Positions 39,367-58,391 of a DNA stretch of 64,000 nucleotides are shown here, in pieces. Under the pieces are notes generated by a model. The model did not search any database, was not told where the DNA came from, and saw nothing but the letters and a program-made list of their open reading frames with translations. The stretch's first letter is position 1; every line of letters starts with the position of its first letter. Where the stretch lies: the sequence record OR844650.1; one strand, written 5' to 3'. The position numbers and the translations under genes were made by a program.

Positions 39367-39443
39367 ATAGTACATCAGTACTGAAAGGTTGTCAAGGGTT
39401 TTCTTTTTGGGGTAAATATGATATAATGAATAAAGGAGGAAAT
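39367..39443. promoter_or_regulatory. Divergent promoters: leftward sigma70, rightward TAAATA-type
   Basis: Minus TTGACA-17-TACTAT (39367-39395); plus TAAATATGATATAAT then AAGGAGG. Confidence 0.65.
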
Positions 39444-40592: not shown

Positions 40593-40600
40593 ATTAATAT

Positions 40601-40660
40601 GCCAGTACTTGATACTGGCTTTTTTTGATTAAATATAGTATAATGAATAAAGGAGGAAAT
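40601..40660 (+). promoter_or_regulatory. Terminator + TAAATA promoter + RBS cassette
   Basis: GCCAGTA-CTTGA-TACTGGC-T7, TTAAATATAGTATAATGAATAAAGGAGG. Confidence 0.85.
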
Positions 40661-41770
40661 ATGTTACCTTTTGTAAGAATGGTTAAGTACGGGAATATTG
40701 CACCAGTACCGAAAAAAATAAAGAAAGTTATAGCAGGATATGATAATTTATATGTACTATATGGTGATGGTTCGCTATATGGTTGTGGAATCAATAACTA
40801 TCAACAGTTAAATATTGATGGAACTGCTACACAAAATAATTGGGTACTAATTACCAATGGTGTTAGTAATGCATGGGCTGGTGGATACAATATTTTATAT
40901 TTGAAAGAAGATAAATTTATAATGCACGGAACTAATGTCTCATTAGGTTTAGGAAATACTACAATTCCATTAGGTGGAGTAGATGTAACTTCTTCATTCC
41001 CAGATATCTCTAATATTAAAATGATATCCATTGGTTTTGATTCAATGCACTATGTTAGTGCTGATGGTACAACTGTATATGGAAGAGGTATGAACACAAA
41101 TGGTTCTGTTGGTTCAGGTAGTACTTACTCACAGAGTACTTTCACTTCAGTACTGAATAATGGAACTAATCAGGTTATTGATATATTTGGTAACGTTAAT
41201 AATACAGTGCTTCTAACATCGAATGGTGAGCTTCGAGCATGTGGGACAAGTGCTTATGGTTCTATAGGAAATGAAACTGGTAAGTGGACATCGTTTGGTT
41301 TAAAATTATCTGGCACTAAAATAATGGGTGGTAATGGGTATAGTACGCTTGCATATACAAATTCGGGAATGTACCACTCAGGGTGGCAGTTAAATGGGGA
41401 ACTAGGAAATGGTTTAGATACTAACGTACAGGTATATCCATTTCAATTTAACTCTAAAACGATAGATAGCAAGATAGATAAAATTGCCAAATCATCATCT
41501 GGGTCATATGTTAACATGTACTCAACAACAGAAGGAAAGATATATACGACAGGTTCGTTTGGTAAAAACGGGTCAACTACTGCATTGAATTTGTTCACCA
41601 ATACATTAACACTTATAAATTACAATCCAGATACCGCCTCGTTGTATACGTGCACAAACTTCAGTGTTGTGTATGATGGTAATGAAACTATTGCTGTAAG
41701 TGGTAGTCCTACATATGTACCAGGGGGCGTTGCCGCTAATAGATGGACTACAATTCCATTACCCAAGTAA
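40661..41770 (+). CDS. MLPF-leader RCC1-like protein 2
   Basis: 369 aa; close paralogue of 54854-55963. Confidence 0.85.
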   Translation: MLPFVRMVKYGNIAPVPKKIKKVIAGYDNLYVLYGDGSLYGCGINNYQQLNIDGTATQNNWVLITNGVSNAWAGGYNILYLKEDKFIMHGTNVSLGLGNTTIPLGGVDVTSSFPDISNIKMISIGFDSMHYVSADGTTVYGRGMNTNGSVGSGSTYSQSTFTSVLNNGTNQVIDIFGNVNNTVLLTSNGELRACGTSAYGSIGNETGKWTSFGLKLSGTKIMGGNGYSTLAYTNSGMYHSGWQLNGELGNGLDTNVQVYPFQFNSKTIDSKIDKIAKSSSGSYVNMYSTTEGKIYTTGSFGKNGSTTALNLFTNTLTLINYNPDTASLYTCTNFSVVYDGNETIAVSGSPTYVPGGVAANRWTTIPLPK

Positions 41771-41774
41771 TACT

Positions 41775-41841
41775 ATGCCAGTACTTGATGCTGGCATTTC
41801 TTTTTGTATTAAATATAGTATAATGTATAAAGGAGGAAAAT
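41775..41841 (+). promoter_or_regulatory. Terminator + TAAATA promoter + RBS cassette
   Basis: Same repeat. Confidence 0.85.
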
Positions 41842-43023
41842 ATGTTACCTTTTGTTAGAATGTTTGATTATGGGAACGTCGTTGAGCCACCTGTGGGTAC
41901 ACGTTATACCTGTAGTGACTATAGTGCGACTTATAGTTTAATAAAGGATGGTGTGTTATATGTATCTGGGATGAATAACTATTATCAGTTAGGTAATAAC
42001 ACTAACGTAACACGTTACAACGAGTGGTTAAAAGTTCCAGAGACTGATAGTGTTAAGTTTTGTAGTACTGGTTATAGTCAGACAATGTATCTGACTAACA
42101 ATGGTAGGATAATGATAGCAGGTGAAGATCCTACTTCCAGTGCGACTTCGGTAAGTGTAAAGGTTTGGACGGATATAACTTCTAGATTTCGTGCAGTTGA
42201 TACTAAAAAGATTGTTTATATTTCAATAGAACGCTTTGGTGTAATGATGATCATGGAAGATGGTTCAGTATGGGCGTGTGGTGTTGATAATACTGGTTGG
42301 AGTGGACAAGGGAGTAAGACTGTTGGTTTCTTTACTTTCAGACAAATATACACCGGAAGTGCAGGAAGTGCAGTTGCTTGTACTGCTGGTACTGGTACTG
42401 CGAGAATTCTGTTAGCTAATGGAACAATCTTGTCCTCTGGTACTAATACATATCATCAATGTAATGCTAGTACTAATCCGGCTGTTCTAACATTCACTGA
42501 ATCATTCCCTGGGGTTGATCCTTCATTGATATATCAAATCAAGATGTGTAATAACAACTGTATTATATTTTTGAGTGATAAGAGATATTACGGTACTGGC
42601 TGGGGAAGTTTTGGTGCATTGGGTGATGGTGATATTACGGGTTCGAATAATAAATTCTATGCAGGTACATTGTCAGTTGCTCCTAAAAACATGCGTGCTT
42701 ATATGTCGTATCTATGTAGTTCTTCTGGGGATTCTAGTATGTACATAGGCGATGATAATTTCATATACACCTGCGGTTATCGTGGGAGGAACTTAATAAA
42801 TGCCACTACAGATATTGGTACGTTCACGAAATGCATTCAAAGTGCACAAGGATACAAGAATGGACTTATATATAGTGGGAATTATTGTGCTGTAGTTTTT
42901 GATCCAGATTTGGGTTCAGGAATGTCATATGCGGTTTCATCACCAAAATTGAATTCTCCAGCACCACAGGCTAGTGTTCCAGCATTGGGTATGAGTTCGT
43001 TACAATCTATCATTTTACCATAA
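41842..43023 (+). CDS. MLPF-leader RCC1-like protein 3
   Basis: 393 aa; SGMNNYYQLGN. Confidence 0.85.
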   Translation: MLPFVRMFDYGNVVEPPVGTRYTCSDYSATYSLIKDGVLYVSGMNNYYQLGNNTNVTRYNEWLKVPETDSVKFCSTGYSQTMYLTNNGRIMIAGEDPTSSATSVSVKVWTDITSRFRAVDTKKIVYISIERFGVMMIMEDGSVWACGVDNTGWSGQGSKTVGFFTFRQIYTGSAGSAVACTAGTGTARILLANGTILSSGTNTYHQCNASTNPAVLTFTESFPGVDPSLIYQIKMCNNNCIIFLSDKRYYGTGWGSFGALGDGDITGSNNKFYAGTLSVAPKNMRAYMSYLCSSSGDSSMYIGDDNFIYTCGYRGRNLINATTDIGTFTKCIQSAQGYKNGLIYSGNYCAVVFDPDLGSGMSYAVSSPKLNSPAPQASVPALGMSSLQSIILP

Positions 43024-43026
43024 ATG

Positions 43027-43098
43027 ATACCAGTACTGAAATATGTGCTGGTATTTTTTTTGTAAATACATTATAATTATTATATGGAGATTTTAGTT
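43027..43098 (+). promoter_or_regulatory. Divergent terminator + TAAATA promoter cassette
   Basis: ATACCAGTAC/GTGCTGGTAT stem, T tract, TAAATA at 43063. Confidence 0.7.
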
Positions 43099-44229
43099 AT
43101 GTTACCTTTTGTTAGAATGTTTGATTATGGGAATACAGTGGCTGCTCCCACTGGTATAAAGGATTTCCAAGCAAATGGAAGCCACTGTATGGCACTAACA
43201 TATAGTGGTGAGATGTGGGCTTATGGTACAAGTACAAGTGGATCAATGGGAACCGGATTCACGGTGGGTGCTGCTGAGAAGGGTTGGTACAAGTCTAACA
43301 TTAGTAATGTTAAATCATTCAGTTCTAATATGCAGACTAGCACAGTGGCTTTGACAAATGATGATAGAGTGCTAGTTTGTGGCTCAACTAGATTTGACAA
43401 ATTCAGTACTCCAGATATTGCATCATCTAACCTTGATTGGTTGGATGTTACTGATCATATTCCACAGGAAGTTATTGATGCTGGGATGAAGCAAGTTATT
43501 AACCACGCATATTATGTTGCCATTCTTACTGAAAACAATCTATTATATAGTGTGGCATTATCTTTGGGTAATACTAGTACTATAATAGATAGAACATGGC
43601 GAAGAAATACATTTGGTGATATACAAGTTGAACGTGTTGTTTCGTTGACACAAACCCCAAGTGGTCCTTTGTGTATAGTTCAAGATGCTGCCGGATACCA
43701 GTATGGTATTGGATATAATGGTAATAAGATTATTGATAATACTTCCACTAATTCATATTCTGTATATACCAAAATGGGTACACTTCCTTACAATGAATTT
43801 GCCATATCGAATAGCGGGAAATTCAGTTCAGCGGTATTATCAGATGGGAGAAGTGTTTATAGTGGTACATTTCCAAAGTCATTCAATAATAGTTTTGGTT
43901 CATTTTTGAAAGTTGGTGCGGTATCAGATACTGTGTTTGGTTTAGATGCAAAAAATATGCGTGGTCAATATGGTCAAAATCAATTACCAATTGCGTCGGC
44001 TGATAACAATGCAAGTAATGGTGTTGTGAACCTTCGTAATGTTCCAGCGGGAACACAAACGAAAGACATTCGATTTATATGCGGAAATGATGTAAAGAAC
44101 GTTTATATCATATACACAAATGAAGACGGCATTAGCTCATTTTATGGATTGGGACCAAACTTTGATCAAAATTCCTCAGCATATGCACAATTCGTCAAAG
44201 TGGATTTGCCAGGGGCATTATTAAATTAA
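43099..44229 (+). CDS. MLPF-leader RCC1-like protein 4 (divergent)
   Basis: 376 aa; YGTSTSGSMGTG, NMRGQYGQ. Confidence 0.8.
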   Translation: MLPFVRMFDYGNTVAAPTGIKDFQANGSHCMALTYSGEMWAYGTSTSGSMGTGFTVGAAEKGWYKSNISNVKSFSSNMQTSTVALTNDDRVLVCGSTRFDKFSTPDIASSNLDWLDVTDHIPQEVIDAGMKQVINHAYYVAILTENNLLYSVALSLGNTSTIIDRTWRRNTFGDIQVERVVSLTQTPSGPLCIVQDAAGYQYGIGYNGNKIIDNTSTNSYSVYTKMGTLPYNEFAISNSGKFSSAVLSDGRSVYSGTFPKSFNNSFGSFLKVGAVSDTVFGLDAKNMRGQYGQNQLPIASADNNASNGVVNLRNVPAGTQTKDIRFICGNDVKNVYIIYTNEDGISSFYGLGPNFDQNSSAYAQFVKVDLPGALLN

Positions 44230-44239
44230 GGAGAGAAAT

Positions 44240-45382
44240 ATGTTACCTTTTGTGAGGATGGTTAAGTTCGGGAATATTGCACCTGCACAAATAGGTAGAT
44301 ATAAAATATACAGTTCATCTTCTTCAATATTTTTATTGGATACCCAAAAACACAATTTGTATAGTACATCGAACATTAATTATACTAGTGGTACAGGTAA
44401 TGTTGAGCCTAAATTTGTGTTAAGTGCAACTAATGTTAAAAGATTATTACTTTCAGATAATAGTTGTGCAATGCAAATATATGAAGATATGAATGGACGT
44501 GCAGCGATGTGTGGTACAAGAACTGCATATAGTGGGGTTACAAATGATAATGTACTGGTATGGACGGATTGCACTACATGGTTCACAAATGTAGGGTTGA
44601 ATGTATCAGATATTCAGTACATGTCTGGTTTTTATAATTTGAAACTAAACATAGTTATGAATAATGGTGATTTGTGGTGTAGTGGGAAAAACAACACTAC
44701 TACTATGTCATCATTTGGTAATGGCACAAATATCGATTCATTTAATCAGTTTACCAAAATAACAACCATATCAAATGTTATTAAAGCAACCGGAAATATA
44801 TACTTATGTGCAGATAATACTTTATGGGGATGTGGTTTAAACTCTTATTATCAGTTAGGGACAGGTACTCAAACATCCAGTATTAATTTGATTATGATGG
44901 CTTCTAATGTTATCGACTCTAATGTTGGTCTTCAAAATACTTATTACTTGACTAATAATAAAGAACTTTATGGTTGTGGTACACAATTTGGTACAACTTA
45001 CGGGAATGAATTTGGAACAGGAAGGCAGGGAACAGCAATACAGTATAAGACTCCTACTATAATTTTCACAAATGCAGATGGTATGGCTGTTTGTGTCGGT
45101 AATATGTCTACTCATGTTATTCAATATGATAAAGTTTTTAGTTCTGGTAATAATGCCCTTGCACAGTTAGGTGTAGGCAACCGTGACAATGTGTACACAT
45201 ATACACAATCATTTGATAATTTCAAAATGGATTCTTCTATAGTACGTGCAAACGTTGGAACATTGATACTGACAGCAGACAATAAGTTATATTACAGTGG
45301 GCGAAATGATGTTGTTATGGGTGGAACAAGCACACAATACACAATGGTTTTCAGTGAAGTTAATATGTCATTTATACAATGA
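44240..45382 (+). CDS. MLPF-leader RCC1-like protein 5
   Basis: 380 aa; close paralogue of protein 1. Confidence 0.85.
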   Translation: MLPFVRMVKFGNIAPAQIGRYKIYSSSSSIFLLDTQKHNLYSTSNINYTSGTGNVEPKFVLSATNVKRLLLSDNSCAMQIYEDMNGRAAMCGTRTAYSGVTNDNVLVWTDCTTWFTNVGLNVSDIQYMSGFYNLKLNIVMNNGDLWCSGKNNTTTMSSFGNGTNIDSFNQFTKITTISNVIKATGNIYLCADNTLWGCGLNSYYQLGTGTQTSSINLIMMASNVIDSNVGLQNTYYLTNNKELYGCGTQFGTTYGNEFGTGRQGTAIQYKTPTIIFTNADGMAVCVGNMSTHVIQYDKVFSSGNNALAQLGVGNRDNVYTYTQSFDNFKMDSSIVRANVGTLILTADNKLYYSGRNDVVMGGTSTQYTMVFSEVNMSFIQ

Positions 45383-45388
45383 ATTAAT

Positions 45389-45453
45389 GCCAGTACTCAA
45401 GTACTGGCTTTTATTTTTTATTAAATATAGTATAATGAATAAAGGAGGGAAAT
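45389..45453 (+). promoter_or_regulatory. Terminator + TAAATA promoter + RBS cassette
   Basis: GCCAGTAC-TCAA-GTACTGGC. Confidence 0.85.
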
Positions 45454-46656
45454 ATGTTACCTTTTGCTAGAATGGTTAAGTACGCGAATATTGCACCAGG
45501 GCCAGAACCTATAGAGTTCTCAAATGTTTTACAACAACATTATACAAACTGTATGTATCTACATAGCCCAACTAATACTTTATATGGTTATGGTAGTAAT
45601 AACTTTTATCAATTTGGTCTTGGGAATTCAGCAGCAGTTGCGTCATTTACAGTACTTGCAACGCGATGTGCAGCCTTTTGGCTTGGTGTTCAAGGTTCAT
45701 TGATGATTGATTTGGATAATAAAATATACTACACTGGGTCGGTTGGTGCATTTTCTGATTATGGAGATGCAACACCTGTTAATGGTTATTTGAGAACATG
45801 GACTGATGTTACTGCTTCATTTAATAAAATTGGTGTTATGGCTAATATGATCAAGTGTGTGTATATAGGTGAAAGTACTAGAATATTATTAACCGATGGT
45901 AGAGTAATTGCGTGTGGAAGAAATACCAATGGTGAATGTGGGTCTGGTAATCAAAATTCCATACCTACACTAACAGTTATGACTAATATGGGTGAAGTTA
46001 CACATATGGCATGTTCATTACAAGGAACGCACTATATTAAATCAAATAAAAAGGCATGGTTTTGTGGTAAGGATAACTTCGGTGAAAGTGGTTGTGGTGC
46101 TAGTTCTATGATATATTTGAACAAATATGTGATGAGTGATGTCGAACATATTAGTACTACATACGATGTTACTTGGTGGTTTACTACTGGTGGGCCTGTA
46201 TATTATAGCGGGGCTAACAGTACTGGACAAGCTGGTAATGGTACGACTACATCGGTAAATCAGCTAACACCAATTAGGAACACATCGGTCACGGTTGATG
46301 TAAGTAAGTACAGTACTTTTATTTGTCCAAGTAATATGGGAAATGCATCAATTGGTGCACCTATGGCACAATACGCACCATATGTTAGAAGTAGTGGTGC
46401 TAACGGATACGGTCAAGAAGGTAATGGAACTAATACATTAGTTAGGACTTGGAATATTTTTAATCTTAATGCAATAAGTGGTGGTTATGACAATGTTCTT
46501 ATGGCATCTAAAGATTGGAGCAGAACCATAATAATTACTAAAGATTATAAATTATATGCATGTGGTGGCTGGAATGGTAATGGTGGTAGATTGCCTGATG
46601 GCACTTATAGTATTACTACACTAACATTAATGCCAACGCAGTTATGGCAACAATAG
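45454..46656 (+). CDS. MLPF-leader RCC1-like protein 6
   Basis: 400 aa; CGRNTNGECGSG, SGANSTGQAGNG. Confidence 0.85.
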   Translation: MLPFARMVKYANIAPGPEPIEFSNVLQQHYTNCMYLHSPTNTLYGYGSNNFYQFGLGNSAAVASFTVLATRCAAFWLGVQGSLMIDLDNKIYYTGSVGAFSDYGDATPVNGYLRTWTDVTASFNKIGVMANMIKCVYIGESTRILLTDGRVIACGRNTNGECGSGNQNSIPTLTVMTNMGEVTHMACSLQGTHYIKSNKKAWFCGKDNFGESGCGASSMIYLNKYVMSDVEHISTTYDVTWWFTTGGPVYYSGANSTGQAGNGTTTSVNQLTPIRNTSVTVDVSKYSTFICPSNMGNASIGAPMAQYAPYVRSSGANGYGQEGNGTNTLVRTWNIFNLNAISGGYDNVLMASKDWSRTIIITKDYKLYACGGWNGNGGRLPDGTYSITTLTLMPTQLWQQ

Positions 46657-46664
46657 GAGGAATT

Positions 46665-47774: not shown

Positions 47775-47780
47775 CATAAT

Positions 47781-47844
47781 GCCAGTACTCAGTACTGGCT
47801 TTTCTTTTTTATTAAATATAGTATAATGAATAAAGGAGGAATAT
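47781..47844 (+). promoter_or_regulatory. Terminator + TAAATA promoter + RBS cassette
   Basis: Same repeat. Confidence 0.85.
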
Positions 47845-49024: not shown

Positions 49025-49029
49025 ACACA

Positions 49030-49094
49030 ATGCCAGTACTTGAGTACTGGCATTCTTTTTGATTAAATATAGTATAATGAATAAAGGAGGAAAT
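49030..49094 (+). promoter_or_regulatory. Terminator + TAAATA promoter + RBS cassette
   Basis: Same repeat. Confidence 0.85.
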
Positions 49095-50249: not shown

Positions 50250-50256
50250 AATTAAA

Positions 50257-50325
50257 ATGCCAGTACTCAAGTACTGGCATTTCTTTTTTTGATTAAATAT
50301 AGTATAATGAATAAAGGAGGAAAAT
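50257..50325 (+). promoter_or_regulatory. Terminator + TAAATA promoter + RBS cassette
   Basis: Same repeat. Confidence 0.85.
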
Positions 50326-51516
50326 ATGTTACCTTTTGTTAGATTGTTTGATTATGGGAATATCACACCTGAACCTCTTCTAATTAAGAAAATAATACCA
50401 ACTGATACTGATGTGGTTGTACTTTATACTGACGGTCAACTATACGCACGAGGAAATAATAGTTATGGGAAGTTCGGTCGCGGAAATAATAATGCAGTAA
50501 GGTCGTGGACATTAATTAGAGAAAATGTCAAAGATTGCTGGATGACACAAGGAACTTTGTTAGTTCAAGATAAGGACTTAAATTATTTTTATTGTGGATA
50601 TGGTGGTCATATTGGTTTAGAAACTAGTACTACATCATTTTTAAGTTATAACCAATATATTGAAAATTTGTACACACAAAGTTCAGGTACTTCAATTAAA
50701 CAGATGTATGCAGGTACTACGTGGTTTACTTTCTTAATGGATAATAATACAATATGGAGTACTGGTTGGAGTGGGGCTAGACAATTCGCTGATGGTACTG
50801 GTAGTACTCAACAAATAACAGATGGATCATTTGTAAAAGCTGTCACGCCTAATGTTGATATTGCACGAATACAGTCAACAAATAGCTGTGTAATGTTTTA
50901 TGATACACAAAATAATTTATATATTGGTGGTAGTACATCAGGTATAAGTACTACTGATACATGGACTCCATACAATCAATATACTTTATATCAGCCAAGT
51001 ACAACATATACAAAAACATTACAATATGTTGTATGTACAATTGGTGCAGTCAGTGCTTTAGTGGAGAATCCAAGTACAGGAGCACGTCAGTTCCTAGTGG
51101 GTGGGAACGCCAATAATGGGGCATGGGGTAATAACACTACGTCTAGTACAGCACGAGCAGTATTAGGAAATAATAGTACAACCTTACCACCCGGTACTTT
51201 GTATTCAATTCATACTGGATACCCAGCACAATCTAGTATACTAGTTACGAGTTCTGGTGTATATGCAACAGGTTTAAATGCGAGTAGTTATGCTGGTTCA
51301 TTGGGTGTTGGTTCTAATGTTACCATTGGTAAATTTACTGCATGTCCATTGCCGTCAGAAATAACATATTCTATGTATGATAAAATAAAAATATATCGAG
51401 GGTCGTTACGTACTTTCCTAACTGCTGATATGAAAAATATATATTCAACCGGAACTTATGATGATGGTGGTCCTAGTACAAATAGATATGTACTTGATAC
51501 TCCAAGACAACTATAA
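50326..51516 (+). CDS. MLPF-leader RCC1-like protein 10
   Basis: 396 aa; RGNNSYGKFGRG. Confidence 0.85.
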   Translation: MLPFVRLFDYGNITPEPLLIKKIIPTDTDVVVLYTDGQLYARGNNSYGKFGRGNNNAVRSWTLIRENVKDCWMTQGTLLVQDKDLNYFYCGYGGHIGLETSTTSFLSYNQYIENLYTQSSGTSIKQMYAGTTWFTFLMDNNTIWSTGWSGARQFADGTGSTQQITDGSFVKAVTPNVDIARIQSTNSCVMFYDTQNNLYIGGSTSGISTTDTWTPYNQYTLYQPSTTYTKTLQYVVCTIGAVSALVENPSTGARQFLVGGNANNGAWGNNTTSSTARAVLGNNSTTLPPGTLYSIHTGYPAQSSILVTSSGVYATGLNASSYAGSLGVGSNVTIGKFTACPLPSEITYSMYDKIKIYRGSLRTFLTADMKNIYSTGTYDDGGPSTNRYVLDTPRQL

Positions 51517-51523
51517 CAATAAT

Positions 51524-51589
51524 GCCAGTACTTTGTACTGGCTTTTATTTTTTTTGATTAAATATAGTATAATGAATAAAGGAGGAAAT
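51524..51589 (+). promoter_or_regulatory. Terminator + TAAATA promoter + RBS cassette
   Basis: Same repeat. Confidence 0.85.
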
Positions 51590-52777
51590 ATGTTACCTTT
51601 TGCAAGAATGGTTAAGTACGGGAATAAAGTCATTCCATATGTTCCCAATTTTACTAAATTAGTCACCCCAGCAGTTGGTTATTCATTTACATGCACAATG
51701 CTGCTTGATGTAAATGGATCAGTGTGGGCTATGGGTCTTCAGAATGCAGGAATTTTTGGGTTAGGTAATACTACACAGGTTACTGAATGGACAAAAATAT
51801 ATAACAATGTTAAAGATTTTTGGTGCAGCACGGGGAATGGTTTTTGTCTAATACGAACAAATGATGATAGATTCTTTTATAGTGGTTTAGATAAATGGCT
51901 AGGTAACAATACAACAAATACTGTAACAACATTCACTGAATGTACGAGTTATTTTACACAATTTGGTATTTCAAAAATCAAAGAGATATATGTAGGTCTT
52001 GATTATGCTTTGATTTTAGGTACTGATAATAGTTTATATTTGTTAGGTGATAATAAAAATTCAAAGTTTGGTTTAAACACTGCATCATATTTTAATAAAT
52101 TTACATTTTTAGTCGATAATGTTAAAAAATTCTGTTCATCCATCACACCATCTAACTGGATTATTAAACTAGATAATACAATATGGCGTACTGGGACAAC
52201 ATCTCATGGAACGTTGGGAAATGGAGTTCAAAACACATATATATTTCCTTGGGTTCAATATAAGGGCACACCTGTTACCGAAGCTATAGACGTTTTTTGT
52301 AGTGCGAGTTATATTGGTATTATAACTAAAGGTACACCAGAATCATGTCCTATGTATACACTAGGCTATCAAGCTGATGGTCAGTTGGGTAATAATACTA
52401 CAGCAGGGGGTTATAAATTAACGCCAACATTATCGAAAACCGTTCCAGATGATAGTGAATTCATTCGAATTGAAAACATCTCATCCCGTGGTCTGGTATA
52501 TTATAGCTCTGGTAAAATTTATAGTACTGGTTATAATAACAATGGTCAGTTGGCAAATAATACTAAAATCAATTCTGGTTCATTTGTTGAAGCAATTTTA
52601 CCTAATGGTGTTAACTTTAAGAAAAGTGAATCACTTGTAGCTGGGAACGATGCAACGTTGTATATGTACATTAATAATAAATTATACTACGCGGGGAAAT
52701 CTCCTGATAATATTTCAGCAAGTAGTTCGTCTGTCATGAAAGAATTCCCACTTCCAACAATTAATGCCAGTACTTGA
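51590..52777 (+). CDS. MLPF-leader RCC1-like protein 11
   Basis: 395 aa; TGYNNNGQLAN; stop codon lies inside the next terminator stem. Confidence 0.85.
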   Translation: MLPFARMVKYGNKVIPYVPNFTKLVTPAVGYSFTCTMLLDVNGSVWAMGLQNAGIFGLGNTTQVTEWTKIYNNVKDFWCSTGNGFCLIRTNDDRFFYSGLDKWLGNNTTNTVTTFTECTSYFTQFGISKIKEIYVGLDYALILGTDNSLYLLGDNKNSKFGLNTASYFNKFTFLVDNVKKFCSSITPSNWIIKLDNTIWRTGTTSHGTLGNGVQNTYIFPWVQYKGTPVTEAIDVFCSASYIGIITKGTPESCPMYTLGYQADGQLGNNTTAGGYKLTPTLSKTVPDDSEFIRIENISSRGLVYYSSGKIYSTGYNNNGQLANNTKINSGSFVEAILPNGVNFKKSESLVAGNDATLYMYINNKLYYAGKSPDNISASSSSVMKEFPLPTINAST

Positions 52778-52830
52778 TACTGGCTTTCTTATTTGTATTA
52801 AATATAGTATAATGAATAAGGAGGGGAATT
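52766..52830 (+). promoter_or_regulatory. Terminator + TAAATA promoter + RBS cassette
   Basis: Identical to 53980-54044. Confidence 0.85.
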
Positions 52831-53973
52831 ATGTTACCTTTTGCAAGAATGGTTAAGTACGGGAATATAGCACCAGTTCCAGTAGTTCCTACAATAAAAG
52901 ATTTTAAGATTGGCTTTTCACATGAAGTGTTATTGGACAGTGCAGGTGATGCATGGGGTATTGGATACAATACAGATGGGCAGTTAGGCTTTTTGGATGC
53001 AAATACAAATTCACTAGGTGCGTGGTCTAAGATATATACTGATGTTCGATTAATTGGAGTTACTGCTAGATATACAGTGGTAGTTACTAATAATAATAGA
53101 ATACTATATGCAGGAAATAACTTAATTTCTAGTACTACTACTCTTGGGTGGACCGATATAACTGCCAGTATGGGTCCGGTTGCGGTGGATAGCATCGATG
53201 CATTATATTGCACAGATGGTATGATGCATATTAAAACTTCAGATGGTTCTTTATATGCATATGGTCGTAACATGAACGCAAACAGTGGTGTTACTGGCGG
53301 TGTTATTAGTGTTGCAACTAAGGTTAATTTGCCTTCTGCTGTAAATGACATGCGATATACGTTTAGTTATGGTTCAGTACTATGTCGCTTGGATACAACT
53401 TCTATATACGCATGGGGACGAAACACAAATGGTGAATTAGGCCAGGGTAATACAACAGCTATCGTTACACCAAAACTATTGTCTGGTGCTTCTATTGCAA
53501 TGGGTACTTCGTATAATGCTACTGCAATTGTTTCTGGTTCTGCATTGTTGCTTACATGTGGTGGACAAAGCAGTGGGCAGTTAGGTAATGGTATTACAAC
53601 TGATGGTAATGTATACACCTTTGGTGTCAGGACATACCCAGGCGATCTTAATACAATAAGAAGTCCAGTGGATTGCAGTACAACTTACACCTCTGCATTT
53701 ATGAGTCCAGATGGTATATATTACACTGGTGCTAACCGAAGTATGTTTGGTGGTATTAGTGGTGCTTCTACCGTTGCTGTATATACTAAATGTAGTGATT
53801 TACCAATAACATATTCTAATATAATTCAGTGGAGTAGTGGTACTATAGGTGGTGCTATATGTAGTAGTACAGAGTTATACCAATGTGGTATAGGTAGATA
53901 CATTGCTGGTGATGGTGCGAGCACAACCAGGTATGGATTTAGGAAGACACCATTACCTTGGGATACTTATTGA
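52831..53973 (+). CDS. MLPF-leader RCC1-like protein 12
   Basis: 380 aa; WGRNTNGELGQG. Confidence 0.85.
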   Translation: MLPFARMVKYGNIAPVPVVPTIKDFKIGFSHEVLLDSAGDAWGIGYNTDGQLGFLDANTNSLGAWSKIYTDVRLIGVTARYTVVVTNNNRILYAGNNLISSTTTLGWTDITASMGPVAVDSIDALYCTDGMMHIKTSDGSLYAYGRNMNANSGVTGGVISVATKVNLPSAVNDMRYTFSYGSVLCRLDTTSIYAWGRNTNGELGQGNTTAIVTPKLLSGASIAMGTSYNATAIVSGSALLLTCGGQSSGQLGNGITTDGNVYTFGVRTYPGDLNTIRSPVDCSTTYTSAFMSPDGIYYTGANRSMFGGISGASTVAVYTKCSDLPITYSNIIQWSSGTIGGAICSSTELYQCGIGRYIAGDGASTTRYGFRKTPLPWDTY

Positions 53974-53979
53974 CATTAC

Positions 53980-54044
53980 GCCAGTACTTGATACTGGCTT
54001 TCTTATTTGTATTAAATATAGTATAATGAATAAGGAGGGGAATT
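53980..54044 (+). promoter_or_regulatory. Terminator + TAAATA promoter + RBS cassette
   Basis: Same repeat. Confidence 0.85.
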
Positions 54045-54782
54045 ATGTTACCTTTTGGAAGAATGGTTAAGTACGGGAATAAAATTGAATATAAGCCACA
54101 TGGTGAACAATTAATCACGACAATAGGAACAACACAATTTACAGTTCCTGCTGGCGTTACCGAAATATCAGTATGTGTTATTTCGCCGGGTGGTCAACGT
54201 GGTGCTGGTGGCGGCTTATCGTGGCGTAATAATATTCCGGTTACTAGTGGTGAGTACTTAAGTGTTTCTCTTACACATCCCAACACTACTACACCAGTTG
54301 AAAACGGTTTATATCGTGGAACTGAAAAACTATGTGTTAGCTTCACTGGTGAATATAGGGTTGGTGGACTAGGTGGGAAAGCTGCTAACGCTATTAATGA
54401 TGGTGGTGGTAATGGGGGCAACGCTGGTGTAAGTGGTGGTGCAGTCATTGGTGGTGGTGCTGGTGGCTACACTGGTAAAGGTGGTAACGGAGATGCAATC
54501 ACTGGTGAAAATGGTGCTGGGGGCGGCGGTGGTGGTGGTGCATTCTATAATACCTCGTTCATTGGTACGGGTGGTGGTACTGGTATCATTGTTCAAGGTG
54601 CTAATGGTATTGGCGGTAGATACGATGGTTCATATAATGGTGGTGCTGGTAGTGGTGGTGCTGGTAAGATGTATGGTGGTGGTGGTAGTATATGGGATAA
54701 TTTTTCTTATACGGCTGCTGGTGGTGGTGCTGTGCGAATAATATGGGGACGTGGGAGATATTATCCTAACAATTCAGTCTAA
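54045..54782 (+). CDS. MLPF-leader glycine-rich protein (virion fibre-type Gly-rich domain), array member 13
   Basis: MLPFGRMVKYGN leader, then GTTQFTVPAGVTEISVCVI..GG and GGGAVRIIWG typical of phage Gly-rich structural domains. Confidence 0.8.
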   Translation: MLPFGRMVKYGNKIEYKPHGEQLITTIGTTQFTVPAGVTEISVCVISPGGQRGAGGGLSWRNNIPVTSGEYLSVSLTHPNTTTPVENGLYRGTEKLCVSFTGEYRVGGLGGKAANAINDGGGNGGNAGVSGGAVIGGGAGGYTGKGGNGDAITGENGAGGGGGGGAFYNTSFIGTGGGTGIIVQGANGIGGRYDGSYNGGAGSGGAGKMYGGGGSIWDNFSYTAAGGGAVRIIWGRGRYYPNNSV

Positions 54783-54789
54783 AATATAG

Positions 54790-54853
54790 GCCAGTACTTG
54801 ATACTGGCTTTCTTATTTGTATTAAATATAGTATAATGAATAAGGAGGGAAAT
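54790..54853 (+). promoter_or_regulatory. Terminator + TAAATA promoter + RBS cassette
   Basis: Same repeat. Confidence 0.85.
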
Positions 54854-55963
54854 ATGTTACCTTTTGTTAGAATGATTAAGTACGGAAATATTGCACCTGA
54901 AGCACCAAAGATAAAGAAAGTACTGTGCGGTCTTGATAATTTGTACGTCCTCTATGGCGATGGCTCACTTTATGGTTGTGGGGTTAATACGTATTTGCAG
55001 TTAAACGTTGAAAATACAGCAACAAGAAATACTTGGATATTAATTTCAGAAGGTGTTACTGATGCATGGGCTGGTGCGTACAATATTCTTTATCTCAAGG
55101 GTGAAGAATTCATAATGCATGGAGTTACCACACAATTAGGCACAGGAAATACTATGATTCCGTTGGGTGGTTTGAATGTTACTTCTTCATTTCCACATAT
55201 ATCTAATATTAAAATGATATCAATTGGTGCAGATACAATGCACTACGTTGATGCTAGTGGTTCGATTGTTTATGGTAGAGGCATGAATGGTAACTATTCA
55301 CTCGGTGGTGGGTATTCCACGGCTCAGAGTACTTTTGTTTCAGTTATTAATACCGGAGCTAATACAGTTCTTGATATATTGGGTACACAGAATAACACAT
55401 TAATATTAACATCAAATAATGAACTTCTCGGTTGCGGGAGCAGTGGGTATGGTTCACTTGGCGTAAGTCCAGGACAGTATACTACACTAGTAAGCAGGTT
55501 AACAAGTGTTAAACTATTTGGTGGTAACAGTACTGGTACTCTTGCTTATTCAGCCAGCAATATATACAACGCAGGTTGGCAGTATATTGGTCAACTTGGT
55601 AACGGTATTACAACGAACACACAAGTATATCCATTTGCATTTAACTCCACTACTATTGATAGTAAGATACATAAAATATCAAAATCAAGTGCGACTTCAT
55701 ATGTTAATATGTACGCAACAACCGAAGGAAAGATATACAGTACTGGTGAATTTGGTAGAAATGGTTCGGGAGGTGGTTTGAGTAGATTCACCAATACACT
55801 AACTTTAGATAATTACAACCCAGAAAAATCATCATTATACACATGTGCACATTTTAGTATAGTATTTGATGGTAATAATCAAATTTATGCTTGTGGTTCT
55901 TTTTTGTATGTACCAGGTCCTATTACCACGAACTCATGGTCTGCAATTACAATGCCGAAATAA
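54854..55963 (+). CDS. MLPF-leader RCC1-like protein 14
   Basis: 369 aa; close paralogue of protein 2. Confidence 0.85.
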   Translation: MLPFVRMIKYGNIAPEAPKIKKVLCGLDNLYVLYGDGSLYGCGVNTYLQLNVENTATRNTWILISEGVTDAWAGAYNILYLKGEEFIMHGVTTQLGTGNTMIPLGGLNVTSSFPHISNIKMISIGADTMHYVDASGSIVYGRGMNGNYSLGGGYSTAQSTFVSVINTGANTVLDILGTQNNTLILTSNNELLGCGSSGYGSLGVSPGQYTTLVSRLTSVKLFGGNSTGTLAYSASNIYNAGWQYIGQLGNGITTNTQVYPFAFNSTTIDSKIHKISKSSATSYVNMYATTEGKIYSTGEFGRNGSGGGLSRFTNTLTLDNYNPEKSSLYTCAHFSIVFDGNNQIYACGSFLYVPGPITTNSWSAITMPK

Positions 55964-55977
55964 TACTATAAAACTAT

Positions 55978-56041
55978 GCCAGTACTTTGTACTGGCTTTC
56001 TTATTTGTATTAAATATAGTATAATGAATAAAGGAGGAATT
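55978..56041 (+). promoter_or_regulatory. Terminator + TAAATA promoter + RBS cassette
   Basis: Same repeat. Confidence 0.85.
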
Positions 56042-57211
56042 ATGTTACCTTTTGGAAGAATGTTCAAGTACGGAAATATTAAACCAACTCTTCCTGAAAT
56101 AAAGAAATTGGATGGTAGTCAATTACATGTCGGATTACTTTATAGTACAGGGAATATGTACATGCGTGGTTCTGGTTCGAACTATAAATTAGGTACAGGG
56201 GATGCTAGTGATGTATTAGGTGGTTGGGTACATGTACCCTATGAAGTTGATGATTTTTGGGCGTGTGTATCCGGTACATTAATAAAGACTGTTGATAATA
56301 AATTATATTGTGCAGGTCTATACATGGGTGGATATTTTGGGGCTAGTGGTTCATATGTTAACTGGACTGAAGTAACTTCATTATTTGTAGGTATTGACGT
56401 GTCGCAAATAAAGAATATAGAATTTACGTCAGCGGGTACTTCCGGTAGTACACTAATATTGATGTTAGATGGTCGTTTATATGGGTTCGGTATGAACAGT
56501 AGATCTGAGTTAGGTGTTAATAACAAAGTTGTATCTCCCATTCTCATAGATACTGAGGTAAGTGCAATAGGAGCACATAAGTTAGGGGGTTCATCGTTCC
56601 ATTATATAAAAGGCGGTAAGTACTACAGATGTGGAACATCGGTTGGTAGTAATATTGGAAGTTCTTCTTTAACTACTTTTACGGTATTGAGTATTCCTGA
56701 TAACGTTATATCTATGCAAATATTATATGACAACGTACAGTTATTATGTTTAGGAAGTTCTGGATATAGTATCTATATGGCTGGTTCTAATGATTATGGT
56801 GGAAGAGGTGGTGGTGGTTCTACTGTTTACACTACATTCAGGAAAATAGATCTTACAGGATTTGGTGTTGCTCCCAGTGAAATACTATTTGAAAATGCCG
56901 GGAATGGTTATGTTAATATATCAACTGATAGTACTGGGGTATATACATGTGGTGGTGGGGCTGGTGTTAATGGTTTAGGTAGACCAACTGATGTGATACC
57001 AAGTTCACAGTTGGGTTCGGTTCAGTTCAGTACTGGAGTAGAACCATCAAATATAAGTCGTGTGTATTCACAGAGTTCGAGTTCTGTTATATATTGTATA
57101 GTTAATAATGAATTGTACTGGGCTGGTAGTAATTCATATTTTACTGATCAAACCACAAATACTGGTACACAATTTTCATTTATTAAGATGAAGGATATGC
57201 CTTCTGCTTAG
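56042..57211 (+). CDS. MLPF-leader RCC1-like protein 15
   Basis: 389 aa; FGMNSRSELG; paralogue of protein 8. Confidence 0.85.
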   Translation: MLPFGRMFKYGNIKPTLPEIKKLDGSQLHVGLLYSTGNMYMRGSGSNYKLGTGDASDVLGGWVHVPYEVDDFWACVSGTLIKTVDNKLYCAGLYMGGYFGASGSYVNWTEVTSLFVGIDVSQIKNIEFTSAGTSGSTLILMLDGRLYGFGMNSRSELGVNNKVVSPILIDTEVSAIGAHKLGGSSFHYIKGGKYYRCGTSVGSNIGSSSLTTFTVLSIPDNVISMQILYDNVQLLCLGSSGYSIYMAGSNDYGGRGGGGSTVYTTFRKIDLTGFGVAPSEILFENAGNGYVNISTDSTGVYTCGGGAGVNGLGRPTDVIPSSQLGSVQFSTGVEPSNISRVYSQSSSSVIYCIVNNELYWAGSNSYFTDQTTNTGTQFSFIKMKDMPSA

Positions 57212-57216
57212 ATTTT

Positions 57217-57282
57217 ATGCCAGTGCCTTGTACTGGCATTTTTTGTCCTAAATATAATAACGATTTACATTTGGAGGATACA
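57217..57282 (+). promoter_or_regulatory. Divergent terminator + TAAATA promoter cassette
   Basis: ATGCCAGTG-CCT-TGTACTGGCAT stem, TAAATA at 57249. Confidence 0.7.
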
Positions 57283-58349: not shown

Positions 58350-58361
58350 AACTCCTTATAC

Positions 58362-58390: not shown

Positions 58391-58391
58391 A

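What the first reader, a model, noticed from the sequence alone, without database searches (positions are those of the whole stretch)
40601..57282. 13 copies of a fused terminator-late promoter-RBS insulator
Seen: GCCAGTAC-loop-(G/A)TACTGGC-T tract-TTAAATATAGTATAATGAATAA(A)GGAGG-ATG. Copies at 52766 and 53980 match over about 100 bp with one mismatch, extending into the leader. There is no -35 box, and TAAATA resembles the T4 gp55-type late promoter core (TATAAATA). Inference: each gene is an autonomous late unit, and the roughly 100 bp repeats are RecA/UvsX substrates for excision, duplication and reordering without a site-specific recombinase. It is the late-gene counterpart of the early cassettes.
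Basis: partly seen in the sequence, partly recalled or inferred. Interest (0 to 1): 0.7.

Follow-up and report, generated by a model that had tools for sequence, protein, structure and literature searches.

The report
Terminator-promoter cassettes in phage gene array
A repeated junction of about 110 bases (terminator hairpin, T4-type late-promoter core, ribosome site and a 12-residue protein tag) separates 16 tandem virion-protein genes of an E. coli jumbo phage, and related phages have added, lost and reordered these genes exactly at the junctions, which makes it a late-gene version of the 'PeSL' shuffling cassettes known from T4-like phages.

Summary
The window is the reverse complement of bases 1-64000 of Escherichia phage EC22.5-2, a 352-kb PBECO4-like Asteriusvirus. 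From 39444 to 57441 it carries 16 tandem genes. Fourteen are RCC1-like beta-propellers, including the frame-broken H and the remnant P; D is inferred from profile alignment only. One (M) is an unrelated glycine-rich protein. Thirteen junctions carry hairpin, T tract, TAAATA-N3-TATAAT, AGGAGG and ATG plus about 12 conserved codons. Eleven are canonical and two divergent. The first gene has a promoter-only copy, and two junctions (before E and G) have only a ribosome site. The module occurs nowhere else in the genome. TAAATA fits the genome's late-type motif, found upstream of head and tail genes. The genome encodes a gp55-like sigma, and the array proteins were found in phAPEC6 virions. Across 60 module variants TAAATA never changes, while the last T of TATAAT often does. 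Stem changes are compensatory or G.U. Nine related genomes show at least seven array orders, with breakpoints inside the module. No transcript data could be obtained. Verdict: a late-promoter analogue of PeSL cassettes, a new variant of a known kind. Expression timing and recombination mechanism are inferred, not shown.

The parts
39444..57441 (+). Tandem array of 16 genes (units A-P), all starting MLPF.R. Fourteen are RCC1-like propellers (including the frame-broken H and the remnant P) and one (M) is glycine-rich.
   Evidence: Gene coordinates. Pfam RCC1 hits were scanned for units A, F, K and O. PHROG 4219 matched B, L and H. Unit D was not scanned on its own; its membership rests on alignment with the other paralogues (A1). 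AF2 model plus Foldseek match to UVR8, TM 0.78. Annotated as 'regulator of chromosome condensation' in WPEC3 and PBECO4.
39412..39443 (+). Promoter-only copy before unit A: gTAAATA-TGA-TATAAT (an extended -10 form), AGGAGG, and no hairpin.
   Evidence: Conserved in six relatives.
40593..40660 (+). Canonical module before B. Hairpin 40601-40619, T7 tract, TAAATA 40630-40635, TATAAT 40639-40644, AGGAGG.
41771..41841 (+). Canonical module before C. Hairpin 41775-41797 (ATGCCAGTAC..GCTGGCAT), TAAATA 41810-41815.
43024..43098 (+). Divergent module before D. Hairpin 43026-43055 (ACCAGTAC..GTGCTGGT), T8 tract, gTAAATA 43063-43068, cat-TATAAT, weak RBS GGAG.
44230..44239 (+). Junction D/E. Only an RBS (GGAGAG), with no terminator or promoter, so E is probably co-transcribed with D.
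45383..45453 (+). Canonical module before F. Hairpin 45389-45408, TAAATA 45422-45427.
46657..46664 (+). Junction F/G. Only an RBS overlapping the stop codon (TAGGAGG), with no terminator or promoter.
47775..47844 (+). Canonical module before H. Hairpin 47781-47799, TAAATA 47813-47818.
49025..49094 (+). Canonical module before I. Hairpin 49029-49054, TAAATA 49064-49069.
50250..50325 (+). Canonical module before J. Hairpin 50255-50282, TAAATA 50294-50299.
51517..51589 (+). Canonical module before K. Hairpin 51524-51542, TAAATA 51559-51564.
52766..52830 (+). Canonical module before L. Hairpin 52766-52784, with the stop codon of K (TGA 52775-52777) in its loop. TAAATA 52799-52804.
53974..54044 (+). 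Canonical module before M. Hairpin 53980-53998, TAAATA 54013-54018. It is 99% identical over 102 nt to the copy at 52766.
54783..54853 (+). Canonical module before N. Hairpin 54790-54808, TAAATA 54823-54828.
55964..56041 (+). Canonical module before O. Hairpin 55978-55996, TAAATA 56011-56016.
57212..57282 (+). Divergent module before P. Hairpin 57217-57239 (GCCAGTGC..GTACTGGC with a G.U pair), cTAAATA 57249-57254. TATAAT is lost; RBS GGAGG.
54045..54782 (+). Unit M. A 245-aa glycine-rich protein unrelated to the propellers but carrying the same module and the same N-terminal 12-22 residues.
   Evidence: No Pfam hit. phrog_4474. Atlas neighbours carry Gly_rich_2. hhalign matches the paralogue profile only at residues 1-22.
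47845..49024 (+). Unit H. The RCC1-like gene has a frame break: a 59-codon ORF, then a 357-codon ORF in the +1 frame. The break is conserved in six genomes.
57283..57706 (+). Unit P. A broken, truncated RCC1-like remnant at the end of the array (52-codon ORF, then a 111-codon ORF in another frame).

Best explanation
The repeat is a composite regulatory and recombination cassette at the junctions of a tandem array of virion-associated proteins in a PBECO4-like jumbo phage. Read 5' to 3' on the + strand, each module has five parts:
1. An intrinsic terminator (7-13 bp G+C-rich hairpin plus U tract) that ends the upstream gene's transcript.
2. About 5-8 nt later, a T4-type late promoter whose essential element is TAAATA. 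It has no -35 and is read by host RNA polymerase carrying the phage's gp55-like sigma.
3. A short leader of about 20 nt (inferred).
4. A strong Shine-Dalgarno sequence.
5. The first 12 codons, which encode a shared N-terminal tag (MLPFVRMFDYGN-like). The tag lies outside the propeller fold and probably directs the protein to the virion.

Most genes are therefore separate late transcription units. E and G ride on D and F.

The bodies of the genes are only about 20-25% identical, while the modules are 80-99% identical over about 110 nt. The modules are thus the only sizeable homology in the array. They serve as crossover points for homologous recombination, probably by the phage's UvsX-type recombinase, within and between co-infecting genomes. 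This recombination deletes, inserts, translocates and swaps whole cassettes without polar effects.

Shown here: the sequence anatomy, its restriction to the array, structure-preserving variation in the stem, the invariance of TAAATA, the encoded sigma and recombinase, and comparative rearrangements with breakpoints in the module.

Inferred: promoter class and timing, termination, the tag's function, and the recombination enzyme.
For: Anatomy and non-randomness.

The module is private to the array in the 352-kb genome. It occurs in only one IMG/VR contig, which is also an Asteriusvirus.

Terminator:
- 28 terminator-like sites in 39000-58500 against 7.4 expected, nearly all at the junctions.
- Hairpin energies are about -10 to -19 kcal/mol.
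- Over 56 distinct modules from 7 genomes, the 7 core pairs are paired in 391 of 392 cells. There are 4 compensatory double changes and 10 G.U single changes, and loops vary freely. G.U pairs hold only in the + strand RNA.

Late promoter:
- ATAAATA is 14-fold enriched in upstream regions.
- [A>C>G]TAAATA lies 35-56 nt upstream of 41 non-array genes.
- Eight of 10 of those genes that were tested are major head, tail sheath, tail fibre or virion structural proteins.
- None of the roughly 95 early-type genes of window 1-39341 has TAAATA in that position. They have TTGACA/TTGCAA-N17-TATAAT instead.
- A gp55-like sigma is encoded: phrog_12791 E 2.7e-154 and phrog_234 E 8.5e-18.
- Related phages CBB and GAP32 were predicted to use ATAAATA before structural genes (PMC5259590).
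- T4 late promoters lack a -35, have an A+T-rich downstream segment, and vary at -13/-12 among T4 relatives (PMC2988020).
- In 60 distinct modules TAAATA is invariant. The final T of TATAAT is A or C in 9, and TATAAT is lost in the P type.

Late or virion products: eight 'DNA condensation' (RCC1-like) proteins of the orthologous array were detected in phAPEC6 virions (PMC7247149, Table 1).

Tag:
- It is invariant or near-invariant over 12 residues in paralogues that are 19-26% identical.
- It is shared with the unrelated glycine-rich unit M.
- It is found on no other ORF of the genome.
- It lies outside the confidently folded propeller in the AF2 model; residues 1-19 have low pLDDT.

Shuffling:
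- Unit orders differ among 9 genomes. Examples: A B C D E F G H I J K L M N O P; A B C D F G O H I J K L T R S; A G K J U M L...; F G b A J H L e Y d.
- Several arrangements are shared by independent assemblies.
- Megablast segment boundaries overlap by 29-113 nt exactly in the module.
- Crossovers are resolved at nucleotide level in A3 and A4.
- A contig of run X19 skips 44271->45486, which is exactly unit E.
- dS between the same two genomes ranges from 0.019 (O) to 0.44 (G), with dN/dS 0.15-0.32. The units are functional and have different histories.
- A UvsX homologue is encoded, E 5.7e-24.
Against: - There are no transcript data. The only RNA run of raw reads (X23) laid no read on the stretch.
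- Eleven of the window's 14 promoter copies (13 modules plus the promoter-only copy before A), and 48 of 60 across genomes, have T just before TAAATA. That base occurs at 1 of 41 non-array late-type sites, and the preferred A is never used.
- TAAATA lies 31-32 nt from the ATG, closer than at other late genes (35-56 nt).
- A perfect TATAAT sits 3 nt downstream, and the first copy has TGATATAAT. A sigma-70-family reading is therefore not excluded.
- gp33 and gp45 homologues were not found by single-sequence phmmer.
- The T tracts are often interrupted (TTTCTTATTT), so termination may be partial.
- Invariance among modules is not independent evidence, because the modules share descent and probably gene conversion.
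- Differences in unit order rest on public assemblies, some of them short-read only.
Confidence: 0.62

Rival explanations
1. The functional promoter element is the TATAAT, not TAAATA. It would act as a -10-only promoter read by host sigma-70 or by the phage's RpoD-like sigma factor, so the array would be expressed early, in the middle period, or constitutively rather than as gp55-dependent late genes.
For: - Ten copies carry a perfect TATAAT with the same flanks (GTATAATG) as the early promoters of the window.
- The first copy has an extended -10, TGATATAAT.
- Asteriusviruses encode an RpoD-like sigma (PMC7247149, PMC11895373).
- The base before TAAATA is atypical for the genome's late sites.
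Against: - There is no -35 hexamer or TG extension in 12 of 13 modules.
- The last T of TATAAT is critical for sigma-70-family -10 recognition (established knowledge). It is A or C in 9 of 60 natural modules and absent in the P type, while TAAATA never changes.
- TATAAT alone occurs 779 times in the genome.
- The products are virion proteins in phAPEC6.
- The array runs opposite to the flanking early genes.
Confidence: 0.17
2. The hairpins are not efficient terminators. The array would be largely one polycistronic late transcript from the first promoter, with internal promoters adding to it. The hairpins would serve as 3'-end or processing and stability elements, so the module would not insulate the genes.
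For: - Stems are short (7-8 bp in most copies, about -10 kcal/mol), and several T tracts are interrupted.
- E and G have no module and must be read through.
- The U tract can pair with the Shine-Dalgarno region in read-through RNA.
Against: - A hairpin plus T-rich tail on the + strand is present at 13 of 15 junctions.
- The stems keep pairing through compensatory and G.U changes.
- The same layout, a hairpin and T tract immediately before TAAATA, occurs at 8 other late genes with unrelated stems.
- The stem-loops of the analogous PeSLs were shown to terminate (PMC2839356).
Confidence: 0.2
3. The modules are conserved only because each duplicated gene keeps its regulatory signals and N-terminus under purifying selection. 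They would have no particular role in recombination, and the differences in order among genomes would be assembly errors or rare unrelated events.
For: - Tandem paralogues normally carry similar upstream regions.
- Repeats of about 110 bp spaced 1.2 kb apart can confuse short-read assemblers.
- JP4's K-J order is seen in only one genome.
Against: - Bodies are 19-26% identical, while spacer positions with no obvious function are identical.
- Every one of the roughly 20 synteny breaks falls in the module.
- Arrangements recur in independent assemblies. PBECO4, slurp01 and E9.1 share F G b A J. WPEC3 and the X19 contig share the E deletion. JP4, E9.1 and the IMG/VR contig share M before L.
- dS differs more than 20-fold between units of one genome pair.
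- N-terminal segments are mosaic.
Confidence: 0.1

Closest known systems
PeSLs (promoter-early stem-loops) of T4-type phages (Arbiol et al. 2010, PMC2839356; Comeau et al. 2014, PMC4122927)
   Same: Both are small composite terminator/promoter motifs repeated between variable, non-core genes. Indels and replacements between close relatives have their breakpoints in the motif. The proposed mechanism is recombination between neighbouring motifs that excises or inserts cassettes. Both occur in phages with T4-like recombination genes.
   Different: - The PeSL promoter is a strong sigma-70 early promoter with -35, -10 and an A+T-rich upstream region. Here there is no -35, and the conserved core is the late-type TAAATA.
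- The repeat here also includes the RBS and 12 codons of a shared N-terminal tag.
- It flanks one family of virion-associated paralogues plus one unrelated cargo, rather than unrelated ORFans.
- Promoter activity, terminator activity and mini-circles were shown experimentally for PeSLs and are untested here.
T4 late promoter (TATAAATA, gp55/gp33/gp45; Geiduschek and Kassavetis 2010, PMC2988020)
   Same: Both have an A+T-rich -10-only element with the core TAAATA, no -35, and an A+T-rich downstream segment. Both lie upstream of virion genes, and a gp55-like sigma is encoded.
   Different: The two bases before TAAATA are AT, GT, TG or CC rather than TA. gp33 and gp45 homologues were not detected here by simple search. 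No transcription start is mapped.
Internal-protein (IP) loci of T-even phages with a conserved capsid targeting sequence (PMC3012670, citing Repoila et al. 1994; discussed in PMC2839356)
   Same: Both are hyperplastic loci that encode highly diverse virion-packaged proteins sharing only a short conserved N-terminal sequence. In both, conserved regulatory elements next to the genes are proposed to confine shuffling to the locus.
   Different: IPs are small proteins inside the head, and their tag is cleaved by the prohead protease. Here the cargo is 370-400-aa beta-propellers. The tag sequence is unrelated, and its function, cleavage and location in the virion are unknown.
RCC1-like domain proteins (UVR8, RCC1, HERC2 RLDs)
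   Same: They share the seven-bladed beta-propeller fold and RCC1 repeats.
   Different: These are phage virion-associated paralogues with an extra N-terminal tag. There is no evidence for guanine-nucleotide exchange or chromatin binding, and the database name 'chromosome condensation' is inherited from the fold.

Membership tests
PeSL cassettes | Composite intergenic motif: a stem-loop terminator directly joined to a promoter | tested here: met
   Thirteen junctions carry hairpin + T tract + promoter-like element. This is shown by sequence only.
PeSL cassettes | The promoter is a sigma-70-like early promoter (-35, -10, A+T-rich upstream region) | tested here: not met
   No -35 hexamer lies at 16-18 nt. 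The invariant element is TAAATA. True sigma-70 promoters of the same window look different.
PeSL cassettes | Breakpoints of indels and replacements between close relatives fall in the motif | tested here: met
   plus the X19 contig joint 44271->45486.
PeSL cassettes | Mini-circles formed by recombination between neighbouring motifs (inverse PCR), and promoter and terminator activity in reporters | not testable with these tools
   Needs bench work. The contig joints are only suggestive.
T4-type late promoter | 8-bp TATAAATA box at about -10 | tested here: inconclusive
   The 6-bp core TAAATA is exact in all modules. The two upstream bases differ from TA. The genome's own late-type sites prefer [A/C/G]TAAATA. 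Variation at -13/-12 is known among T4 relatives.
T4-type late promoter | No -35 element; A+T-rich segment downstream of the box | tested here: met
   The downstream sequence is TAGTATAATGAATAAA.
T4-type late promoter | The phage encodes a gp55-type sigma | tested here: met
   L006:17486-18328 matches phrog_12791 'sigma factor for late transcription' (E 2.7e-154) and phrog_234 (E 8.5e-18).
T4-type late promoter | gp33 co-activator and gp45 clamp | tested here: inconclusive
   phmmer with T4 gp33 and gp45 found nothing at E<=1; this is an insensitive single-sequence search. Iyer et al. report gp33 orthologues in group 2 jumbo phages. Buttimer et al. found none in CBB.
T4-type late promoter | Drives late (virion) genes; transcription start a few bases downstream, appearing after replication | not testable with these tools
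   Indirect only: virion mass spectrometry of phAPEC6 orthologues and the association of the motif with head and tail genes. RNA run X23 held no reads.
Intrinsic (factor-independent) terminator | G+C-rich stem-loop followed by a U tract on the transcribed strand, with the stem kept by compensatory change | tested here: met
   391 of 392 core cells are paired, with 4 compensatory and 10 G.U changes. Termination in vivo is not tested.
RCC1-like beta-propeller | RCC1 repeats above Pfam cut-off and a seven-bladed propeller fold | tested here: met
   PF00415 scores 35-38 bits against a cut-off of 21.7. The profile matches UVR8 at E 2e-43. AF2 model has pLDDT 84.5, and Foldseek gives TM 0.78 to UVR8.
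T4 IP-type capsid targeting sequence | Short conserved N-terminal peptide on otherwise unrelated virion-packaged proteins, cleaved by the prohead protease | tested here: inconclusive
   The conserved tag is shared by unrelated bodies and lies outside the fold. Virion association is known only for phAPEC6 orthologues. Cleavage and location were not testable.

The most novel reading that the evidence does not exclude
The module is a complete plug-in unit: stop the previous transcript, start a late one, translate strongly, and address the product to the virion through a 12-residue N-terminal tag. It would let Asteriusviruses exchange unrelated surface or cargo domains (RCC1-like propellers, a tail-fibre-type glycine-rich domain) among co-infecting genomes and within a population. 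That would be a late-gene, protein-addressed counterpart of PeSLs, generating virion heterogeneity such as the 'hairy' fibres.
Probability: 0.3. Interest if true: 0.65.

Novelty: new variant of a known kind. Interest (0 to 1): 0.5.

Why it matters
PeSLs showed that regulatory cassettes can double as portable homology for modular shuffling, but only for early, mostly ORFan genes of T4-like phages. This array would extend that principle in three ways: to late, virion-associated genes; to a distantly related jumbo-phage lineage; and to a repeat that also encodes a shared protein tag. It gives a concrete, testable explanation of why the 'chromosome condensation' genes are the most variable named genes between otherwise near-identical Asteriusviruses. 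It also suggests a route to the identity of their unusual hair-like fibres or internal proteins. For phage engineering, the module could be a natural landing pad for adding virion-displayed or virion-packaged cargo.

Tried and rejected
1. My first guess was a nucleus-forming (phiKZ-like) phage with its own RNA polymerases. I rejected this. The closest relatives are PBECO4-like Asteriusviruses, which are group 2 jumbo phages that use host polymerase with phage sigma factors.
2. Transcript test. One raw-read RNA run (X23) was laid on 42900-48899 and gave 0 reads. That used the single read-laying run, so no 5' or 3' ends could be mapped.
3. A -35 box in the hairpin loop (TTGATA). It lies 24 nt from TATAAT, which is too far, so I rejected it.
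4. A MotA-box-like reading of GGCTTT. The spacing is wrong (19 nt rather than about 12), so I rejected it.
5. A genome-wide consensus. The 22-mer and the hairpin are absent outside the array, so the module is not a general promoter consensus. Only its TAAATA core is general.
6. Rfam: no family matched in 33000-59000.
7. IMG/VR scans for the module and for the tag found only one Asteriusvirus contig.
8. Single-sequence phmmer with T4 gp55 was not significant. PHROGs on the top candidate then identified the late sigma. phmmer with T4 gp33 and gp45 found nothing.
9. N-terminal tag as the closing 'velcro' strand of the propeller. The AF2 model does not support this: residues 1-19 are unstructured with low confidence, and the tag also sits on a non-propeller protein.
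10. Programmed frameshifting in H and P. The breaks look like simple indels in short A or AG runs, without a recognisable slippery site, so I left this open.

Full report
IDENTITY OF THE SEQUENCE

Megablast of 50000-54000 hits 36 phage records. All are Escherichia or Salmonella jumbo phages of about 350 kb, such as PBECO4, slurp01, Ecwhy_1 and WPEC3, and the best hit is 100% identical. The window is exactly the reverse complement of bases 1-64000 of OR845138.1, Escherichia phage EC22.5-2. I fetched the whole 351,992-bp record so that genome-wide statements could be tested. These Asteriusviruses are 'group 2' jumbo phages. They have no RNA polymerase of their own, but they have phage sigma factors and T4-like replication and recombination genes (PMC7824862).

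THE OBSERVATION

The hairpin pattern has 10 exact sites on the + strand against 0 in shuffles. The 22-mer TTAAATATAGTATAATGAATAA has 10 exact and 2 near copies against 0.01 expected.

The region 39444-57441 holds 16 head-to-tail genes (units A-P), each starting ATG TTA CCT TTT (MLPF...). Reading each junction gives:
- eleven canonical modules, before B, C, F, H, I, J, K, L, M, N and O;
- two divergent ones, before D and P;
- a promoter-only copy before A;
- two junctions, before E and G, with nothing but a ribosome site 8-10 nt long.

Identity stays at 93%, 79% and 67% over the first three 15-nt windows of the coding sequence, then falls to the random level. In the alignment of the 13 modules (A2), the eleven canonical copies are 91% identical from promoter to RBS, and about 80% over the hairpin/T tract and over the first 45 coding nt.

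WHAT THE GENES ARE

- Four units scanned against Pfam (A, F, K, O) hit RCC1 repeats and the RCC1-like domain, and three more (B, L, H) match PHROG 4219.
- A profile of the 13 full-length paralogues matches UVR8, RCC1 and HERC2 at E down to 2e-43.
- An AlphaFold2 model of unit B (pLDDT 84.5, pTM 0.86) is a beta-propeller from residue 20 onward. It superposes on UVR8 with TM 0.78.
- The paralogues are only 19-26% identical to one another, apart from one pair at 64%. Even so, M1, L2, P3, F4, R6 and N12 are invariant and Y10 and G11 nearly so.
- In the model the first 19 residues are unstructured and of low confidence.
- Unit M (54045-54782) is a glycine-rich protein of another family (phrog_4474). 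Its Atlas neighbours carry the Gly_rich_2 domain, which is often joined to tail-fibre domains. M matches the paralogue profile only at residues 1-22.
- The tag occurs on no other ORF of the genome.
- In the related phage phAPEC6, eight proteins of the orthologous array ('DNA condensation protein', about 40 kDa) were detected in purified virions by mass spectrometry (PMC7247149, Table 1).
- Orthologous units compared between EC22.5-2 and slurp01 have dN/dS of 0.15-0.32, so they are functional genes.

THE HAIRPIN

The scan finds 28 terminator-like sites in 39000-58500 against 7.4 expected. Nearly all lie at the junctions, with the T-rich tail on the + strand. Folding gives 7-13-bp stems of about -10 to -19 kcal/mol.

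I collected 56 distinct hairpin-bearing modules from seven genomes (A5) and counted pairs. The seven core pairs are formed in 391 of 392 cells. Every departure from GCCAGTA/TACTGGC but one keeps pairing:
- G-C to A-U three times;
- C-G to U-A once;
- ten single changes to G.U.

The loop varies freely in length and sequence. G.U pairs hold only in RNA of the + strand, so the element is selected as a structure in the sense transcript. This is what an intrinsic terminator, or a 3' stability hairpin, requires. Whether it terminates efficiently is not shown, and several T tracts are interrupted.

THE PROMOTER-LIKE ELEMENT

The window gives a useful internal control. The roughly 95 small genes on the minus strand of 1-39341 have textbook sigma-70 promoters: AGTACTTGCAA or TTGACA, 17 nt, then GTATAATG, followed by a 5'-UTR hairpin. 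The array modules have the TATAAT but no -35 and no TG extension. The exception is the first copy, TGATATAAT.

Genome-wide findings:
- The 7-mer ATAAATA is 14-fold enriched in upstream regions.
- TAAATA preceded by A, C or G lies 35-56 nt before the ATG of 41 non-array genes.
- Of ten such genes scanned against PHROGs, eight are major head, tail sheath, tail fibre, tail or 'virion structural' proteins.
- None of the early-type genes has TAAATA in that position.

This matches what was predicted for the related phages CBB and GAP32, namely ATAAATA before structural genes and a gp55-like sigma (PMC5259590). It also matches the T4 late promoter: an 8-bp TATAAATA box at -10, no -35, an A+T-rich downstream segment, and variation at -13/-12 among T4 relatives (PMC2988020). 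The genome encodes a protein matching PHROG 'sigma factor for late transcription' at E 2.7e-154 and the broader late-sigma family at 8.5e-18.

Natural variation is also informative. In 60 distinct modules from seven genomes TAAATA never changes. The final T of TATAAT, a base critical for sigma-70-family -10 recognition (established knowledge), is A or C in nine, and the P-type module has lost TATAAT altogether.

Two points count against the late reading:
- The base before TAAATA is T in 48 of 60 modules and never the preferred A, while T occurs at 1 of 41 other sites.
- The distance to the ATG (31-32 nt) is shorter than elsewhere.

I therefore rate the late, gp55-type reading as the best-supported one, but not as shown. 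The only raw-read RNA run offered (X23) laid no read on 42900-48899.

THE MODULE IS PRIVATE, THE LAYOUT IS GENERAL

Neither the 22-mer (up to 4 mismatches) nor the hairpin occurs anywhere else in the 352-kb genome. In IMG/VR the module and the tag are found in one contig, another Asteriusvirus. The layout 'hairpin, T tract, then TAAATA within a few bases' is also seen at 8 of the 41 other late-type sites, with unrelated stems, against 12 of the 13 array sites scored. So the array uses the genome's ordinary way of joining late units, but with one sequence repeated throughout.

SHUFFLING

I extracted the arrays of eight further genomes and clustered units at 88% nucleotide identity or more. The orders are:

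| Genome | Unit order |
|---|---|
| EC22.5-2 and ECO103 | A B C D E F G H I J K L M N O P |
| EC.P1 | A B Q C D G H I J K R S |
| WPEC3 | A B C D F G O H I J K L T R S |
| JP4 | A G K J U M L V W X O Y P |
| E9.1 | B a F G b A J M L f O d |
| slurp01 | Z B a F G b A J H L c O d |
| PBECO4 | F G b A J H L e Y d |
| IMG/VR contig (partial) | J M g L f X N d |

There are whole-unit deletions (E), insertions (Q), a translocation (O) and order changes (L-M versus M-L, J-K versus K-J).

Several arrangements recur in independent assemblies, which argues against misassembly:
- F G b A J is found in PBECO4, slurp01 and E9.1.
- M before L is found in JP4, E9.1 and the IMG/VR contig.
- The E deletion is found in WPEC3 and in a 1,584-nt contig of run X19 that skips 44271->45486.

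Megablast segments of each relative against the window always change partner inside the module, with 29-113 nt of overlap.

At nucleotide level:
- The WPEC3 D-F junction carries the D/E-type upstream sequence and the E-type first 45 coding nt, then switches to F. The crossover lies at about +34 to +46 (A3).
- The WPEC3 G-O junction has G's hairpin, the common promoter, a K/L-like N-terminal segment and then O's body. It is a fine-scale mosaic (A4).

Synonymous divergence between the same two genomes ranges from 0.019 (O) to 0.44 (G), so cassettes have separate histories. The phage encodes a UvsX homologue (E 5.7e-24 against T4 UvsX). That this enzyme does the recombining is an inference.

In run X1 the contigs of unit E have about a fifth of the depth of their neighbours, and one contig joins 43037 to 47791. 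This may reflect mixed array variants in one sample, but contig data cannot decide.

COMPARISON WITH WHAT IS KNOWN

The closest described system is the PeSL. These are small composite cassettes of a strong sigma-70 early promoter and a terminating stem-loop, repeated in the hyperplastic regions of T4-type phages. For PeSLs, indels between close relatives break in the motif, promoter and terminator activity were measured, and mini-circles were detected by inverse PCR (PMC2839356, PMC4122927).

The present module shares the architecture, the genomic behaviour and the proposed mechanism. It fails the defining 'early sigma-70 promoter' feature and adds an RBS and a coding tag. It therefore works like a PeSL without being one.

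The same authors noted analogous, non-homologous elements at the internal-protein loci of T-even phages. The diverse virion-packaged products of those loci share only a short capsid targeting sequence (PMC2839356, PMC3012670). That is the nearest parallel for the conserved tag.

I found no paper describing the junction module or cassette shuffling in the Asteriusvirus array. The papers note only the multiplicity and variability of the 'chromosome condensation' genes. My search was limited to the held library.

VERDICT

It is right about the layout, the absence of a -35, the late-type core and the role in rearrangement. It is wrong that every gene is autonomous, and it remains untested for transcription and circles. 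I class the finding as a new variant of a known kind, of moderate interest.

Noticed in passing
window 47845-49024 (unit H) and 57283-57706 (unit P): Both RCC1-like genes have a frame break at nearly the same place, just after G.LY.R of the first blade. In H the break is an extra A in CGG AAA CCA. In P it is a 2-nt loss in AGAGA. The H break, followed by an intact 357-codon ORF, is conserved in six genomes, and the P split recurs in JP4, slurp01, PBECO4 and E9.1. These could be pseudogenes, tag-less internal starts or recoding.
   Followed up: partly
whole genome (OR845138.1); densest in window 20000-40000: The palindrome CAGTACTG occurs 204 times against 3.4 expected, and AGTACT 919 times against 119. 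The extended consensus is TTTCAGTACTGAAA, and 74% of copies lie inside coding sequence. It also sits in early promoters (AGTACTTGCA at -35, CAGTACTG before -10), and the array's terminator stem is built on it. Its function is unknown.
   Followed up: partly
window 32870-34550: This 1.7-kb stretch has no convincing gene. It carries about 12 copies of an 8-bp unit (TAGCCGTC) at 33341-33439. The GC skew changes sign at about 34 kb, although the genes on both sides are on the minus strand. This looks like an origin or a boundary.
   Followed up: partly
window 13000-33000, minus strand: There are dozens of small genes, each with a near-identical cassette: AAAGTACTTGCAA or TTGACA, N17, GTATAATG, then a 5'-UTR hairpin GGGGA...TCCCC and an RBS. 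These are PeSL-like early cassettes, but the stem-loop is downstream of the promoter.
   Followed up: partly
window 49032-49051 and 50259-50278; L012 and L001 orthologous sites: The 4-nt loop of the perfectly palindromic terminator is flipped (TTGA versus TCAA) between orthologous junctions of genomes that are 98-99% identical (junctions before I and J). This is the kind of small inversion expected from hairpin or cruciform template switching.
   Followed up: no
window 39412-39433: The first promoter of the array, which alone lacks an upstream hairpin, reads TGATATAAT. That is an extended -10 and could allow sigma-70 transcription of unit A. It is conserved in all relatives, whichever unit comes first.
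   Followed up: no
window 52785-52826 and other junctions: In a read-through RNA the U tract (CUUUCUUAUU) is predicted to pair with AAUAAGGAGG. This would hide the Shine-Dalgarno sequence of the next gene, whereas a transcript started at the internal promoter would leave it free.
   Followed up: no
window 42900-48899 in runs X1 and X19: In X1 the contigs of unit E have a word depth of about 4.5 against about 23 for the neighbours, and one contig joins 43037 to 47791 (hairpin to hairpin). This may reflect coexisting array variants in one sample.
   Followed up: no
window 34550-39341, minus strand: A second paralogue array of about 20 genes of 60-70 aa lies here, spaced about 190 nt apart and almost without intergenic DNA. 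Its copy number also differs among relatives (WPEC3, JP4, PBECO4).
   Followed up: no
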